DNA of 64,000 bases, taken from Octopus sinensis (Eukaryota). The position numbers and the translations under genes are program-made. Shown piece by piece: positions 40,311-45,789 of the stretch; the stretch's first letter is position 1, and each line of letters begins with the position of its first letter. The notes beneath the pieces were generated by a model. It was not told where the DNA came from. It searched no databases and saw only the letters and a list, made by a program, of their open reading frames with translations. Location of the stretch: contig NC_042999.1 in NCBI RefSeq assembly GCF_006345805.1, positions 40,858,001 to 40,922,000 on the forward strand, given 5' to 3'.

Positions 40311-40329
40311 CGTTTAAGAAAGGAAAATA
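40311..40329 (-). other. 3' half of a putative 54-nt exon, ending at a GTAAGT donor (40310-40305)
   Basis: Minus strand ...TTTTCCTTTCTTAAACG|GTAAGTTTT directly beside the mariner TA. Confidence 0.35.
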
Positions 40330-40410
40330 TTGGGTTGTCCGGAAAGTTCGTGCCGATTATTAAAGAAAAGAAAAAGGTCAATAAATACTTGCCATTACAT
40401 TTTTAATCGA

Positions 40411-42160
40411 CCACATCTGAACCATGTGGTCGGTTGTGTTTTTTTCGGCTCCTGAAAATTCGGTAAAAAAGAACAAAAAGCGTTGTTGTTGTTGTGGAAA
40501 TTCTGAACGGCGTTGATGCGGTTTCGCGTTTCGCTCGTTCGGCGCGTTAAACTTTTTTCTGTTTTGGCGGCCGTTTTCGGTCTGTCAGACAGGAGGAAAT
40601 GGACTGTGAGTCTCTAACAGACTTGTCCACGACAGATGAGGAACTGGAACAGGCAATTGCAATGAAGCTGATGGAAGAAAAGGCTGGAGTTTTCGAGTCT
40701 TTATCAGACTTGCCTACGTCTGAGAAGGAGCTAGAAATGGCAGCGAGGAATTTGGAAGAGAAGCTGAGTTATACCTATGCCGGTGTAACCAAGAAGGCGG
40801 AAGAGAAAGGGGTCGACATGGCCAAGTTGCCAAGTTACCAGAAATACATGAAAAAGGAAAGCGGTGAGGTGGAACTATCAGCGACACCCAGGAGAAAGGA
40901 ATGGTATGATAAGAGGACCATTAGTTACAGGGTGTTCGCAAACGAAAGGAAGAGGGTAGAAGTTGTAACCATGCAGTGGATAGAGGAAGCCTTGCGACGA
41001 ACTGAGGAGGAAATAAATTTTCTGACTCGAGGATCCAAGTATGGGACCGTAGTTGTGCACTTTAAAAGTGAATCTGCAGCGAGGAAGATGGCGGCGAAGG
41101 CGGTGAAGTCGGAAAAGTTAACACTGTTACCTACGTATTTAAACAGGAGGATTACACGAATAAGGGTGGAGGGAGTGCCACCAAACGTGGAGGCAGAATG
41201 GATTGTGGTGGCTGTGATCAGCGGCACGAGGACGAAGTGGATATTCTCCATGCCTCGGTTAAGTCCGAGGGCTGGAGAGGCGTAACAGTGGAGCTGAACG
41301 TACAGGCAGAGACCGAGGTACTGGTGGACCTGACGGAAAGCATCAGATTGGGAGACGTGATCATGAGAGTGTGGGTGGAGGGCAGGGCTCCACGTTGTTA
41401 CAAGTGTGGCCTGAGGGGTCACATAAGAGCCTTCTGCCCTCCCCCAGGGAAAAAATGGATTCCGAACCACAGGAGAGAAGCAGAAACCAGAGGAGAAGGA
41501 GACAGTAGAAGAGGAAGAGAATACACAGAAATGGAAGGAAGTGGAAGTAAGAGAAGAGAAGAATACGTGGAAAAGAAAATAATATGGAACTCCAATCCAC
41601 CCCAAAACCACCTACGCCCTCTGAGTCCCACCCTATCCATGCAGACATTGAACCCACCCGCCCCCCCCAACAAGAAAACAAAAGAAAAAAAGGAATACAC
41701 ACACACAAGAGATTGAAATCGATATCAGGCCGTACATTTGTACTATGACTGAACAGAAAGAAGTTAAAAGTCTAATGGAAGAGTATAAATGGTATGAAGT
41801 TGGTGAGACTAGGTGCTGTGATTGAAAAGAAGAATTTGATGAGTTTATGGTGAGGTGTGAAAGGGAGAATTGGGAGGTGAAAGATATAAGAATGAGCGAT
41901 GAATTCGTGGAAAATATGGATGAGTATTTCGGAGTAAGAATGGATATGGAATTTATTCGTATTGGCAAAGAACATTCAAGTGACTATGAAAAACAAAGGA
42001 CAGGTAAGTGATGCTGACGGACGGGGCCGTTGGTATCGCTTTCATTTTATCATTTTTTCGTTTAACAATTCATTTTCATAAAGTTTAATTATAATGTTAT
42101 ATGTCCCCATGTCTCTTGGTGTCCCCCTCTGTGTCGCCCCTAGTGGGTAATAAAGAATCA
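40411..42160 (+). mobile_element. ORF1-only retroelement, unit 1 (1750 bp)
   Basis: CpG-rich 188-nt leader, ORF, 3' UTR ending GCCCCTAGTGGGTAATAAAGAATCA. Confidence 0.85.
40599..42011 (+). pseudogene. Tx1/L1-type ORF1p (gag-like; RRM-like + CX2CX4HX4C), frameshifted as assembled
   Basis: SYTYAGV; FLTRGSKYGTVVVHFKSESAA; LLPTYLNRRITRIRVEGVPPN; RCYKCGLRGHIRAFCP. Indels at ~41225 and downstream. Confidence 0.8.
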
Positions 42161-43927
42161 CCACATCTGAACCATGTGGTCGGTTGTGTTTTTTTCGGCT
42201 GCTGAAAATTCGGTAAAAAAGAACAAAAAGCGTTGTTGTTGTTGTGGAAATTCTGAACGGCGTTGATGCGGTTTCGCGTTTCGCTCGTTCTGCGCGTTAC
42301 ACTTTTTCTGTTTTGGCGGCCGTTTTCGGTCTGTCAGACAGAAGGAAATGGACTATGAGTCTCTAACAGACTTGTCCACGACAGATGAGGAACTGGAACA
42401 GGCAATTGCAATGAAGCTGATGGAAGAAAAGGCTGGAGTTTTCGAGTCTTTATCAGACTTGTCTACGTCTGAGAAGGAGCTAGAAATGGCAGCAAGGAAA
42501 TGGAAGAGAAGCTGAGTTATACCTATGCCGGTGTAACCAAGAAGGCAAGAGGCGGAAGAGAAAGGGGTCGACATGGCCAAGTTGCCAAGTTACCAGAAAT
42601 ACATGAAAAAGAAAAGCGGTGAGGTGGAACTATCACCGACACCCAGGAGAAAAGAATGGTATGATAAGAGGACCATTATTTACAGGGTGTTCGCAAACGA
42701 AAGGAAGAGGGTAGAAGTTGTAACCATGCAGTGGATAGAGGAAGCCCTGCGACGAACTGAGGAGGAAATAAATTTTCTGACTCGAGGATCCAAGTACGGG
42801 ACCGTAGTTGTGCATTTTAAAAGTGAATCTGCAGCGAGGAAGATGGCGGCGAAGGCGGGGAAGTCAGAAAAGGTAACACTGTTACCTACGTATTTAAACA
42901 GGAGGATTACACGAATAAGGGTGGAGGGAGTGCCACCAAACGTGGAGGCAGAATGGATTGTGGCGGCTGTGATCAGCGGCCACGAGGACGAAGTGGATAT
43001 TCTCCATGCCTCGGTTAAGTCCGAGGGCTGGAGAGGCGTAACAGTGGAGCTGAACGTACAGGCAGAGACCGAGGTACTGGTGGACCTGACGGAAAGCATC
43101 AGATTGGGAGACGTGATCATGAGAGTGTGGGTGGAGGGCAGGGCTCCACGTTGTTACAAGTGTGGCCTGAGGGGTCACATAAGAGCCTTCTGCCCTCCCC
43201 CAGGGAAAGAAATGGATTCCGAACCAGAGAGAGAGAAGCAGAAACCAGAGGAGAAGGAAACAGAGGAAGAGAATACACAGAAATGGAAGGAAGCTGGAAA
43301 TAAGAGAAGAGAAGAAGAATACGTGGAAAAGAAAATAATATGGAACTCCAATCCACCCCAAAACCACCCACGCCCTCTGAGTCCCACCCTATCCATGCAG
43401 ACATTGAACCCACCCGCTCCCCCCCAACAAGAAAACAAAAAAAAAAAAAAGAATACACACACACAAGAGATTGAAATCGATATCAGGCCGTACATTTGTA
43501 CTATGACTGAACAGAAAGAAGTTAAAAGTTAATGGAAGAGTATAAATGGTATGATGTTGGTGTGGTGAGACTAGGTATGCTGTGATTGGAAAAGAAGAAC
43601 TTTGATGAGTTTATGGTGAGGTGTGAATGGAGAAAGGAGATTGGGAGGTGATGATATAAGAACGAGCGATGAATTCGTGGAAAATATGGATGAGTATTTG
43701 GAGTAGAATGATATGGAATTTATTCGTATTGGCAAAGAACATTCAAGTGACTATGAAAAACAAAGGACAGGTAAGTGATGTTGACGGACGGGGCCGTTGG
43801 TATCGCTTTCATTTTATCATTTTTTCGTTTAACAATTCATTTTCATAAAGTTTAATTATAATGTTATATGTCCCCATGTCTCTTGGTGTCCCCCTCTGTG
43901 TCGCCCCTAGTGGGTAATAAAGAATCA
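42161..43927 (+). mobile_element. ORF1-only retroelement, unit 2 (1767 bp)
   Basis: Direct head-to-tail repeat of unit 1. Confidence 0.85.
42348..43778 (+). pseudogene. ORF1p copy 2; 319-aa open core at 42573-43532
   Basis: Same motifs; -1 at ~42500, 7-bp duplication at ~42547, indels after ~43530. Confidence 0.8.
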
Positions 43928-45686
43928 CCACATCTGAACCATTTGGTCGGTCGTGTTTTTTTACGCTCGTAAAATTCGGTAAAAAAGAACAAAAAGCGTT
44001 GTTGTTGTTGTGGAAATTCTGAACGGCGTTGACGCGGTTTCGCGTTTCGCTCGTTCGGCGAGTTAAACTTTTTTCCTGTTTTGGCGGCCGTTTTCGGTCT
44101 GTCAGACAGAAGGAAATGGACTATGAGTCTCTAACAGACTTGTCCACGACAGATGAGGAACTGGAACAGGCAATTACAATGAAGCTGATGGAAGAAAAGG
44201 CTGGAGTTTTCGAGTCTTTATCAGACTTGTCTACGTCTGAGAAGGAGCTAGAAATGGCAGCGAGGAAATTGGAAGAGAAGCTGGGTTATACCTATGCCGG
44301 TGTAACCAAGAAGGCGGAAGAGAAAGGGGTTGACTTGGCCAAGCTACCAAGTTACCAGAAATACATGAAAAAGGAAAGCGGTGAGGTGGAACTATCACCG
44401 ACACCCAGGAGAAAAGAATGGTATGATAAGAGGACCATTATTTACAGGGTGTTCGCAAACGAAAGGAAGAGGGTAGAAGTTGTAACCATGGAGTGGGTAG
44501 AGGAAGCCCTGAGAAGAACTGAGGAGGAAATTAATTTTCTGACTCGAGGATCCAAGTACGGAACCGTAGTGGTACATTTTAAAAGTGAATCTGCAGCGAG
44601 GAGATGGCGGCGAAGGTGGTGAAGTCAGAAAAGGTAACACTGTTACCTACGTATTTAAACAGAAGGATTACACGGATAAGGGTGGAGGGAGTGCCACCAA
44701 ACGTGGAGGCAGAGTGGATTGTGGCGGCTGTGATCAGCGGCCACGAGGAGGAAGTAGGATATTCTCCATGCCTCGGTTAGTCCGAGGGCTGGAGAGGCGT
44801 AACAGTGGAGCTGAACGTACAGGCAGAGACCGAGGTACTGGTGGACCTGGCGGAAAGCATCAGATTGGGAGACGTGATCATGAGAGTGTGGGTGGAGGGC
44901 AGGGCTCCACGTTGTTACAAGTGTGGCCTGAGGGGTCACATAAGAGCCTTCTGCCCTCCCCCAGGGAAAGAAAGTGATTCCGAACCACAGAGAGAGAAGC
45001 AGAAACCAGAGGAGAAGGAGACAGTAGAAGAGGAAGAGAATACAGAAATGGAAGGAAGTTGGAAATAAGAGGAAGAGAAGAATACGAGGAAAAGAAAATA
45101 ACATGGAACACCAATCTACCCCAAAACCACCCACGCCCTCTGAGTCCCACCCTATCCATGCAGACAGTGAACCCATCCGCTCCCCCCCCAACAAGAAAAC
45201 AAAAGAAAAAAATAATACAAACACACTAGAGATTGAAATCGATATCAGGCCGTACATTTGTACTATGACTGAACAGAAAGAAGTTAAAAGTCTGATGGAA
45301 GAGTATAAATGGTATGAAGTTGGTGAGACTAGGTATGCTGTGATTGAAAAGAAGAACATAGATGAGTTTATGGTGAGGTGTGAAAGGGAGAATTGGGAGG
45401 TGAAAGATATAAGAATGAGCGATGAATTCGTGGAAAATATGGATGAGTATTTCGGAGTAAGAATGGATATGGAATTTATTCGTATTGGCAAAGAACATTC
45501 AAGTGACGATGAAAAACAAACGACAGGTAAGTGATGCTAACGGACGGGGCCGTTAGTATCGCTTTCATAATATCATTTTCTTTCACTTAACAATTCATTT
45601 TTCATAAACTTTAATTATAATGTTCTATGTCCCCATGTCTTTTGGTGTCCCCCTCTGTGTCGCCCCTAGTGGGTAATAAAGTATCA
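43928..45686 (+). mobile_element. ORF1-only retroelement, unit 3 (1759 bp)
   Basis: Direct repeat with private substitutions. Confidence 0.85.
44116..45534 (+). pseudogene. ORF1p copy 3; intact N- and C-termini
   Basis: Same motifs; single-base indels at ~44600, ~44755-44780 and ~45060. Confidence 0.8.
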
Positions 45687-45752
45687 CCATGTTCTAAAAT
45701 AAGTCGAAAGGTAAGCTGCTATAAATCGGCACGAACTTTCTGGACAACCCAA

Positions 45753-45789
45753 TACAAATGGGATAGTTTAGTTCATAGGCACACAATGT
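45753..45789 (-). other. 5' half of the putative 54-nt exon, preceded by a strong acceptor
   Basis: Minus strand TCTTTTCCTTTTTCTTTTTATTCAG|ACATTGTGTG... Confidence 0.35.

What the first reader, a model, noticed from the sequence alone, without database searches (positions are those of the whole stretch)
40328..45754. Mariner ends wrapped around a retroelement array: a DNA-transposon/LINE composite
Seen: near-perfect 29-bp TIRs and TA duplication, only ~80 bp and ~65 bp of terminal sequence, no transposase, and 5.28 kb of cargo that starts and stops at the same unit register (CCA at both junctions) with no TSD around the array. Known: Xenopus Tx1L/Tx2L retrotransposons insert specifically into Tx1D/Tx2D DNA transposons, and non-autonomous TIR elements move in trans. 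Inference: either a Tx1-type element repeatedly targeting a site in a mariner end, or a Pack-type mariner that carries RNA-binding ORF1 genes. Either way the whole unit could be mobilised by cut-and-paste.
Basis: partly seen in the sequence, partly recalled or inferred. Interest (0 to 1): 0.85.

Follow-up and report, generated by a model that had tools for sequence, protein, structure and literature searches.

The report
Retroposon trimer nested in mariner MITE
Three head-to-tail copies of a LINE-derived retroposon that encodes only ORF1 sit inside a 147-bp mariner-type miniature transposon of an octopus genome, and this looks like an ordinary nested insertion by a LINE family that habitually stacks copies head-to-tail, not a new kind of composite mobile element.

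Summary
TA plus 29-nt inverted repeats (1 mismatch) enclose 81 bp and 63 bp of host-element sequence. Between them lie exactly three head-to-tail units of 1750, 1767 and 1759 bp, with CCA at both outer junctions.

- **TIRs:** they are genuine mariner TIRs, identical over 28 nt to those of transposase-encoding mariners found in ant DNA.
- **Unit:** it is a non-autonomous LINE derivative. It has a 5' UTR, a 473-codon ORF1 (two predicted RRM folds plus a CCHC knuckle), a roughly 150-nt 3' UTR, and the 3' tail shared with an L1/Tx1-like LINE and a SINE in the same window. It has no ORF2.
- **History of the units:** all 25 frameshifts are private to single units, and one branch shows an excess of synonymous changes. 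The units therefore descend from at least two functional source copies.
- **Relatives elsewhere:** in Octopus sinensis, relatives of the unit are single copies flanked by 16-19 bp target duplications, and none lies in a mariner. Full-length LINEs of this family form head-to-tail clusters in O. sinensis and O. vulgaris.

Stacking is therefore a trait of the retroelement family, and the mariner is most likely an incidental first target. Capture by the mariner (a Pack-type element) is disfavoured. Movement of the whole composite is untested, because the host genome could not be searched.

The parts
40328..40329 (.). TA target-site duplication, left copy
   Evidence: Read directly. Nearly all of the 124 ends of the same TIR family in ant contigs are TA-flanked.
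40330..40358 (+). Left mariner-type terminal inverted repeat (29 nt)
   Evidence: The TIR is identical over 28 nt to the TIRs of 1.24-kb elements that encode HTH_48 and Transposase_1.
40359..40410 (+). Internal sequence of the host miniature element, left of the array (52 bp)
   Evidence: It shows no significant similarity to the subterminal regions of the ant mariner.
40411..42160 (+). Unit 1 of the ORF1-only LINE derivative (1750 bp). The ORF runs from ATG 40599 to the stop at 42011 and carries 8 private frameshifts.
42161..43927 (+). Unit 2 (1767 bp). The ORF runs 42348-43778 with 11 private frameshifting indels. The longest intact piece is 42573-43532 (319 aa).
   Evidence: The structure model shows two RRM folds.
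43152..43193 (+). CCHC zinc knuckle (CYKCGLRGHIRAFC) of unit 2; the same motif is present in units 1 and 3
   Evidence: C194, C197 and C207 are invariant in the 19-sequence alignment. The profile hits retroviral nucleocapsid knuckles at E about 1e-5. Pfam zf-CCHC matches 8 of 19 family members.
43928..45686 (+). Unit 3 (1759 bp), the most diverged unit with 56 private substitutions. The ORF runs 44116-45534 with 6 private frameshifts.
45632..45686 (+). 3' tail of unit 3 (..CTCTGTGTCGCCCCTAGTGGGTAATAAAGTATCA). The equivalent tails of units 1 and 2 are at 42106-42160 and 43873-43927.
   Evidence: The tail motif is shared with the window's LINE and SINE: 21 matches against 0.22 expected.
45687..45689 (+). 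CCA of ambiguous origin: a 3-bp target duplication or microhomology, or host sequence, or the first 3 nt of a further unit
   Evidence: The relative in L122 ends at ..ATCA, so CCA is not part of the 3' end.
45690..45723 (+). Internal sequence of the host miniature element, right of the array (34 bp)
45724..45752 (-). Right mariner-type TIR (29 nt, one mismatch: A instead of G at position 12; both variants occur in the ant family)
45753..45754 (.). TA target-site duplication, right copy
17150..19400 (-). 5'-truncated copy of the candidate partner LINE (RT plus zinc-binding C-terminus). Its 3' end carries the same tail motif and is followed by a (TATC)n microsatellite.
   Evidence: Pfam RVT_1. 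Relatives carry RVT_1, zf-RVT and Exo_endo_phos. Tail read.

Best explanation
**What it is.** The structure is a nested insertion, not a functional composite element.

1. A 147-bp non-autonomous mariner-type element (a MITE) inserted at a TA.
2. A non-autonomous, ORF1-only derivative of an octopus L1/Tx1-like LINE later retroposed into it by target-primed reverse transcription. This 'half-LINE' is analogous to mammalian HAL1. It was presumably mobilised in trans by the reverse transcriptase and endonuclease of the partner LINE, which recognises the shared 3' tail.
3. Further full-length copies then joined exactly at the 5' end of the resident copy, in the same orientation, giving CCA-unit-CCA-unit-CCA-unit-CCA. 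The last step from two units to three may instead have been unequal exchange.

**What is shown.** The identity of the TIRs, the homology of the unit's ORF to LINE ORF1, the shared tail, the absence of ORF2, the intact ancestral ORF, the descent from at least two selected sources, and the family-wide stacking at other loci.

**What is inferred.** Mobilisation in trans, the order of events, and the way new copies are drawn to resident 5' ends.

**Consequence.** The mariner ends are structurally intact, so cut-and-paste of the whole 5.4 kb is conceivable. Nothing indicates that it has happened.
For: **TIRs**
- The 28-nt TIR recurs in at least 120 metagenome contigs (ant DNA). There it ends about 122-bp MITEs and 1.24-kb elements with Pfam HTH_48 and Transposase_1, nearly all TA-flanked.

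**The unit ORF is a LINE ORF1**
- tblastn against a full-length Argonauta hians LINE gives E = 1.9e-27, upstream of its APE-RT ORF2.
- The representative-protein search returned 320 relatives.
- The AlphaFold model has pLDDT above 90 for residues 1-210 and matches tandem-RRM proteins.
- The CCHC knuckle is supported.

**Shared 3' tail**
- The tail is shared with the window's LINE, the SINE, and the A. hians and O. sinensis elements.

**Origin of the three units**
- The majority rule of the three units gives an open 473-codon frame, and all 25 frameshifts are private.
- The u3 branch has 15 synonymous changes out of 32, against 7.7 expected (p = 0.004).

**Relatives outside mariners**
- O. sinensis L127 carries E0, 80-85% identical to the unit in nucleotides. 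It has an intact 490-codon frame, an exact 16-bp TSD, and sits about 25 nt inside the 5' end of a LINE.
- O. sinensis L122 carries a sister ORF1-only element with a 19-bp TSD inside a SINE head.

**Stacking without any mariner**
- L127 holds three LINEs that are 75-88% identical, in the same orientation, each joined within about 45 nt of the next one's 5' end. One of them has an exact 16-18 bp TSD.
- O. vulgaris L128 holds at least 3 LINE copies with a 5.28-kb period.

**Published precedents**
- Tandem TEs arising by double insertion (PMC5932611).
- HAL1 (PMC5753468).
Against: - The array has no long target duplication, only CCA, whereas single relatives have 16-19 bp.
- No intact copy of this particular 147-bp element was found, so loss of target sequence cannot be assessed.
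- Only four long octopus loci could be inspected. Two of them (L122, L130) show no stacking, so the strength of the family trait is poorly quantified.
- The window's own genome could not be searched. Other copies of the composite, or a preference of this unit family for this MITE, are therefore not excluded.
- Some 1-bp frameshifts could be assembly errors.
Confidence: 0.72

Rival explanations
1. Mariner-specific targeting. The partner LINE's endonuclease prefers a site inside this MITE family, as Tx1L does in Tx1D or SINEU-3 does in Mariner-N4_AMi. Units would then have inserted there sequentially, each sandwiching a 3-bp CCA duplication.
For: - Tandem SINEU-3 copies in a non-autonomous mariner, sandwiching a TSD, are a published precedent (PMC4494074).
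- The pattern CCA-unit-CCA-unit-CCA-unit-CCA fits repeated insertion at one site.
- The LINE carries the L1/Tx1-type domain set and a Type I ORF1.
Against: - The three insertion sites of ORF1-only elements that could be read differ in sequence: AATCGA^CCATG in the MITE, GGCA^GAAACG in a SINE head, and ATATAT^GGATGTG in a LINE 5' UTR.
- Neither relative lies in a mariner.
- No TIR-like sequence occurs in the roughly 77 kb of other Octopus loci inspected.
- Stacking occurs without any mariner.
Confidence: 0.13
2. Single-event concatemer. One target-primed reverse transcription event produced all three units. The reverse transcriptase either jumped from the 5' end of one template RNA to the 3' end of another, or copied a read-through multimer RNA from an older array.
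For: - The junctions are precise end-to-end, with only a constant CCA.
- The O. vulgaris array has 99% identical copies.
- Differences shaped by selection between units are compatible with different template RNAs.
Against: - The private branch lengths are very unequal (17, 20 and 56 substitutions).
- In L127, two of the stacked elements carry their own exact 16-18 bp TSDs, which shows separate insertion events in this family.
Confidence: 0.1
3. Pack-type capture. The array was copied from elsewhere into a mariner during abortive gap repair after excision, creating a cargo-carrying non-autonomous mariner that spreads by cut-and-paste.
For: - Both TIRs are intact, and both sequence variants occur in the active-looking family.
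- TA flanks both ends.
- Only 3 nt of microhomology lie at the junctions.
Against: - Both outer junctions coincide with the retroposon's own 5' and 3' termini. The 3' end ..ATCA is confirmed independently in L122 and at the LINE ends, and the 5' end agrees within about 17 nt with E0. Random capture would rarely give that.
- The cargo consists of complete transposable-element copies, not host gene fragments.
- No second copy is known.
Confidence: 0.05

Closest known systems
HAL1 (half-L1) of mammals
   Same: It is a non-autonomous LINE derivative that keeps ORF1 and the 3' end and lacks ORF2. It depends on the partner LINE's ORF2 protein, and its ORF1 was kept open during its spread (PMC5753468; here).
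   Different: The ORF1 here is Type I (two RRMs plus a CCHC knuckle), not the Transposase_22 type. The host is a cephalopod. The element uses a specific 3' tail shared with a SINE instead of poly(A), and here it is stacked head-to-tail.
Tx1L in Tx1D (Xenopus) and SINEU-3 in Mariner-N4_AMi (crocodilians)
   Same: A retroelement mobilised by an L1/Tx1-type LINE lies inside a non-autonomous DNA transposon. For SINEU-3 the copies are tandem and sandwich a duplication, and the host element is a mariner (PMC4494074).
   Different: In those cases targeting is sequence-specific and seen at many loci, with a 16-bp TSD. Here only one locus is known, only CCA is sandwiched, and relatives insert elsewhere.
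Tandem TE dimers by double insertion (Drosophila R1, jockey, P, hobo)
   Same: Head-to-tail arrays of complete or 5'-truncated elements arise from repeated insertion at one site and can then grow by unequal exchange (PMC5932611).
   Different: In this octopus family the recurrent site appears to be the 5' end of a resident copy of the same retroposition community (LINE, ORF1-only element or SINE head), not a host sequence such as rDNA.
HeT-A of Drosophila telomeres
   Same: It is a Gag/ORF1-only non-LTR retroposon that relies on another element's reverse transcriptase and forms head-to-tail arrays (recalled from general knowledge; touched on in PMC5932611).
   Different: HeT-A arrays form at chromosome ends. 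The arrays here are internal, and single copies have ordinary target duplications.
Pack-MULE / Pack-type TIR elements
   Same: TIR ends without a transposase enclose foreign coding sequence.
   Different: Pack elements carry host gene fragments with arbitrary breakpoints and exist in several copies. Here the cargo is whole retroposon copies ending at their own termini.

Membership tests
Non-autonomous mariner (Tc1/mariner superfamily) element | TA target-site duplication | tested here: met
   TA lies at 40328-29 and 45753-54. The ends of the same TIR family are TA-flanked.
Non-autonomous mariner (Tc1/mariner superfamily) element | Terminal inverted repeats of about 28-30 bp matching those of a transposase-encoding mariner | tested here: met
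   Exact 28-nt matches end 1.24-kb elements that have Pfam HTH_48 (E = 1.4e-15) and Transposase_1. Transposase relatives are named SETMAR-like or Mos1 in ants and bees.
Non-autonomous mariner (Tc1/mariner superfamily) element | Subterminal or internal homology to the autonomous partner | tested here: not met
   The internal 89 bp score no better than shuffles against the ant mariner subtermini. No octopus autonomous partner was available for comparison.
Non-autonomous mariner (Tc1/mariner superfamily) element | Multiple copies in the host genome | not testable with these tools
   No octopus genome can be searched by DNA. No copies were found in the rest of the window or in about 77 kb of other Octopus loci.
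ORF1-only non-autonomous LINE derivative (HAL1-like) | ORF homologous to ORF1 of an autonomous LINE | tested here: met
   tblastn against ORF1 of the A. hians LINE gives E = 1.9e-27. Matches to ORF1 of O. sinensis and O. vulgaris LINEs are 36-37% identical.
ORF1-only non-autonomous LINE derivative (HAL1-like) | No reverse transcriptase or endonuclease ORF | tested here: met
   Each 1.75-kb unit has a single ORF and gives no RVT hit. The relatives E0 and the L122 element also lack RT.
ORF1-only non-autonomous LINE derivative (HAL1-like) | 3' end shared with the partner LINE | tested here: met
   The tail ..GCCCCTnGTGGGTAATAAAGAA.. is shared by the unit, LINEs of three species and the SINE.
ORF1-only non-autonomous LINE derivative (HAL1-like) | Dispersed copies flanked by target-site duplications | tested here: inconclusive
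   This is met for relatives: a 16-bp TSD in L127 and a 19-bp TSD in L122. For the array in the window only CCA is present.
Tx1 clade of site-specific LINEs | RT phylogeny within the Tx1 clade | not tested
   No reference set was available. Only the domain set (APE, RVT_1, zf-RVT) and the Type I ORF1 were seen. 'L1-Tx1' families are reported in O. vulgaris (PMC13282606).
Tx1 clade of site-specific LINEs | One specific target sequence shared by the copies | tested here: not met
   The target sequences differ among the sites read. What recurs is the position (the first 45 nt or so of a resident element), not the sequence.
Pack-type cargo-carrying TIR element | Captured host gene fragments with arbitrary breakpoints | tested here: not met
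   The cargo is three complete retroposon copies, and both junctions lie at the element's termini.
Pack-type cargo-carrying TIR element | Several copies of the same composite at different sites | not testable with these tools
   The host genome is not searchable. Exact look-up of the 319-aa ORF found nothing.

The most novel reading that the evidence does not exclude
This octopus L1/Tx1-like LINE family may 'home' to the first 45 nt or so of resident copies, in the same orientation, and its dependants (ORF1-only half-LINEs and the tail-sharing SINE) may do the same. If the 5' junction is then resolved by homology, the result is perfect head-to-tail arrays. The trimer in the mariner MITE would be one product of this process, and such arrays could seed satellites. 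A weaker add-on is that the array-bearing MITE is still mobilisable in trans.
Probability: 0.3. Interest if true: 0.6.

Novelty: new member of a known kind. Interest (0 to 1): 0.35.

Why it matters
As a composite mobile element it matters little. Nested transposable elements are expected in a genome that is about two-thirds repeats, and retroelements lying inside DNA transposons have been known since Tx1.

Two side results are more useful.

- **ORF1-only 'half-LINEs' in octopus.** Octopus genomes carry ORF1-only derivatives of an L1/Tx1-type LINE whose ORF was kept open by selection. This extends the HAL1 phenomenon to molluscs and to Type I ORF1 proteins.
- **Same-orientation stacking.** The LINE, its ORF1-only parasite and the partner SINE repeatedly lie within the first few tens of nucleotides of one another's 5' ends, in the same orientation. 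If this is a real integration preference, it would explain tandem LINE arrays and assembly gaps in octopus genomes, and it would offer a route from retroposons to satellites.

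Tried and rejected
- **Retrozyme or Penelope-like idea (tandem units, hairpin at the unit start).** Rfam at gathering thresholds found nothing in the window, and the ORF is a LINE ORF1. Rejected.
- **Word-indexed protein search with the 319-aa piece.** It found nothing. The full HMMER search was needed.
- **Scan of metagenome contigs for the TIR.** The aim was to find other copies of the composite. It returned 120 contigs, but they are leaf-cutter-ant DNA. 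They contain no octopus SINE, LINE or unit, and the transposase relatives are named Atta and bees. The scan proves that the TIR is a mariner TIR. It says nothing about copy number in octopus.
- **Continuity of the host sequence across the array.** My eyeball alignment suggested that the host sequence on both sides of the array is contiguous in the ant mariner's 3' region. It did not beat shuffles and was dropped.
- **Exact look-up of the window's 319-aa ORF.** It is not on record, so the window's assembly is probably not in the collection. Three further look-ups of relatives also failed.
- **SINE head-to-tail pairs as independent support for stacking.** Most are a fixed dimer (positions 1-225 followed by 43-225) that was amplified as a family, and two of them belong to a segmental duplication. 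Only the array at 60751-61330 counts as separate events.
- **Pfam Ephrin hit on the C-terminal 143 aa.** At E = 9e-5 it is below the curated cut-off. It was treated as spurious and not pursued.

Full report
**Observation**

A 31-nt inverted repeat (TA plus a 29-nt TIR, one mismatch) lies at 40328-40358 and 45724-45754. The TIR occurs nowhere else in the window, and none of 100 shuffles gave a match. Inside the TIRs are 52 bp and 34 bp of further host-element sequence and no transposase ORF. Between them lie three head-to-tail units: 40411-42160, 42161-43927 and 43928-45686, followed by CCA. The junctions read AATCGA|CCACATCTG on the left, AATCA|CCACATCTG internally and GTATCA|CCA|TGTTCT on the right. 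Substitution divergence between units is 2.1-4.5%, so this is not an assembly duplication.

**Host genome**

- The window's SINE copies are up to 97% identical to a SINE in Octopus sinensis.
- The window's LINE RT has Argonauta hians as its best named relative.
- ORF1 relatives come from O. sinensis and O. vulgaris assemblies.
- The window is therefore an Octopus-like octopod genome. Its own ORFs are not on record in the collections.

**The ends**

- A scan of metagenome contigs for the 28-nt TIR hit at least 120 contigs.
- In those contigs the TIR terminates about 122-bp MITEs and 1.24-kb elements. Nearly all are TA-flanked.
- The 1.24-kb elements encode pieces with Pfam HTH_48 ('HTH domain in Mos1 transposase') and Transposase_1.
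- The contigs are ant DNA, not octopus. They contain no octopus SINE, LINE or unit, and the transposase relatives are named from Atta ants and bees.
- The TIR is thus a bona fide mariner TIR shared across phyla. The internal 89 bp of the window's element show no significant similarity to the ant element.
- With the array removed, the host element is 147 bp, a MITE-sized mariner derivative.

**The unit**

- Each unit has about 190 nt of 5' UTR, one long ORF and about 150 nt of 3' UTR. It ends in ..GTGGGTAATAAAGAATCA.
- The ORF is broken in every unit, but all 25 frameshifting indels are private. The majority rule of the three units gives an open 473-codon frame.
- Pfam sees only a weak zinc knuckle in a single copy. 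Eight of 19 family members match zf-CCHC, and a family profile hits nucleocapsid knuckles.
- An AlphaFold model built on the family alignment is confident for residues 1-210. It matches tandem-RRM proteins such as IMP3 RRM12, U2AF65 and Sxl.
- Two RRMs plus CCHC is the 'Type I' ORF1p described for plant L1 and Tx1-like elements (PMC5203782).
- The ORF is homologous to ORF1 of a full-length A. hians LINE (E = 1.9e-27), which lies upstream of that element's APE-RT-zinc-finger ORF2. It is also homologous to ORF1 of LINEs in O. sinensis and O. vulgaris.
- The last 50 nt or so of the unit are shared with three other elements: a 5'-truncated LINE in the window (17150-19400, minus strand), the A. hians and O. 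sinensis LINEs, and an abundant tRNA-type SINE. The tail motif gives 21 matches in the window against 0.22 expected.
- The unit is therefore an ORF1-only, tail-bearing, non-autonomous derivative of this LINE family. It is the counterpart of mammalian HAL1 (PMC5753468).

**History of the three units**

- Private substitutions number 17, 20 and 56 for u1, u2 and u3.
- After allowing for transition bias, the u3 branch carries 15 synonymous changes out of 32, against 7.7 expected (p = 0.004). The u1 and u2 branches are not significant.
- Part of the divergence between u3 and u1/u2 therefore arose in elements whose ORF was under selection.
- The array thus holds copies from at least two functional sources. 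It is not one dead copy duplicated in place. The u1/u2 pair could be either a third insertion or a local duplication.

**Relatives elsewhere**

- *O. sinensis L127.* It carries the closest relative found, E0, which is 80-85% identical in nucleotides and 84% identical in the ORF1 core. E0 is a single copy with an intact 490-codon frame and exact 16-bp direct repeats (GGATGTGATATAATGA). It is not in a mariner and lies about 25 nt inside the 5' end of a full-length LINE.
- *O. sinensis L122.* It carries a sister ORF1-only element (52% amino-acid identity) with a 19-bp duplication. The element is inserted at position 9/10 of a SINE head and ends in ..AAAGAAATCA. This confirms independently that the unit's 3' end is ..ATCA and that CCA is not part of it.

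**Stacking is a family trait**

- In L127, three full-length LINEs that are only 75-88% identical lie in the same orientation. One abuts the next tail-to-head. Another is inserted 28-44 nt inside the 5' end of its neighbour, with an exact 16-18 bp duplication.
- In O. vulgaris L128, at least three 99%-identical LINE copies form a 5.28-kb-period array that runs into an assembly gap.
- In the window, a SINE array at 60751-61330 has junctions at SINE position 9/10. This is the same site used by the L122 element.
- Two other loci (L122, L130) have single elements.
- Repeated same-orientation insertion at or just inside the 5' end of a resident element is thus recurrent in this retroposition community, without any mariner.
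- Tandem TEs formed by double insertion and later unequal exchange are well documented (PMC5932611).

**Interpretation**

The most economical account is a MITE that received one ORF1-only retroposon, after which further copies were added at the resident copy's 5' end. The CCA sandwiched at every junction fits a 3-bp duplication or microhomology. It is much shorter than the 16-19 bp seen in single relatives, and this difference remains unexplained.

- Mariner-specific targeting, as for SINEU-3 in Mariner-N4_AMi (PMC4494074), is a real precedent and cannot be excluded without the genome. However, the three readable targets of ORF1-only elements differ in sequence and context.
- A single-event concatemer is possible but fits the unequal branch lengths less well.
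- Capture by gap repair (Pack-type) is unlikely, because both outer junctions coincide with the retroposon's own termini.
- Mobilisation of the 5.4-kb composite by a mariner transposase is conceivable, since both TIR variants are common in the family. It is untested. From general knowledge of Himar1 and Mos1, mariner transposition falls steeply with element length.

**Verdict**

The structure is a new member of known kinds: a half-LINE, a tandem array formed by repeated insertion, and a nested transposable element. Its interest is modest. The more interesting lead is the apparent homing of this LINE family and its dependants to each other's 5' ends.

Noticed in passing
window 8609-8825, 15219-15499, 22755-23142, 26431-26818, 31213-31620, 47942-48350, 55315-55653, 60315-60713: An abundant tRNA-type SINE shares the LINE's 3' tail. 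In seven of these eight places it occurs as a fixed dimer (positions 1-225 followed directly by 43-225); the copy at 8609-8825 is single. The two monomers show consistent differences at several loci, so the dimer was amplified as a family.
   Followed up: partly
window 60751-61330; L122 5441-5460 and 7068-7086: The SINE array has junctions tail|AGAATCATTAGC, at SINE position 9/10. This is the same site (GGCA^GAAAC) at which the O. sinensis ORF1-only element of L122 is inserted with a 19-bp duplication. It may be a recurrent nick site in SINE heads.
   Followed up: partly
window 40330-40358 and 45724-45752; loci L002-L121: The octopus MITE's TIR is identical over 28-29 nt to a mariner that is very abundant in leaf-cutter-ant DNA, with relatives in bees, bats and cetaceans. 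This suggests a horizontally spreading mariner lineage. No octopus transposase of this family was seen.
   Followed up: partly
window 16900-17150: A long (TATC)n/(TGTC)n microsatellite starts directly at the 3' end of the 5'-truncated LINE (..AATAAAGAAACATATCTATC..), as if it grew out of the element's terminal ATCT.
   Followed up: no
window 42001-42011, 43768-43778, 45524-45534; L122 6897-6910: A consensus splice-donor-like GGTAAGTGA overlaps the ORF1 stop codon. It is conserved in the 52%-diverged O. sinensis relative. Its meaning is unknown.
   Followed up: no
window 40411-40429 (and the start of each unit): The unit's 5' end is a hairpin: CCACAT-CTGAACC-ATGTGG. A CTGAA motif recurs at the 5' ends of related LINEs in L127 and L128.
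   Followed up: no
window 45103-45534 (C-terminal 143 aa of ORF1): The C-terminal domain evolves fast and is not recognisably conserved in the A. hians ORF1. It gives a weak Pfam Ephrin match (E = 9e-5, below the cut-off), which is probably spurious.
   Followed up: no
window about 22400-23200 and 26070-26850: Two stretches are about 93% identical, including a SINE dimer and its flank. This is a local segmental duplication.
   Followed up: partly
window 59004-59103; L128 19186-19285: Both contain 100-N assembly gaps. The one in O. vulgaris L128 interrupts a tandem LINE array, which suggests that such arrays are collapsed or unresolved in assemblies.
   Followed up: no
window 46339-46790: A roughly 450-bp imperfect (CT)n tract lies 600 bp downstream of the composite.
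   Followed up: no
L127 495-2185: The O. sinensis relative E0 has an uninterrupted 490-codon frame and perfect 16-bp duplications. It looks like a young and possibly still active ORF1-only element.
   Followed up: partly
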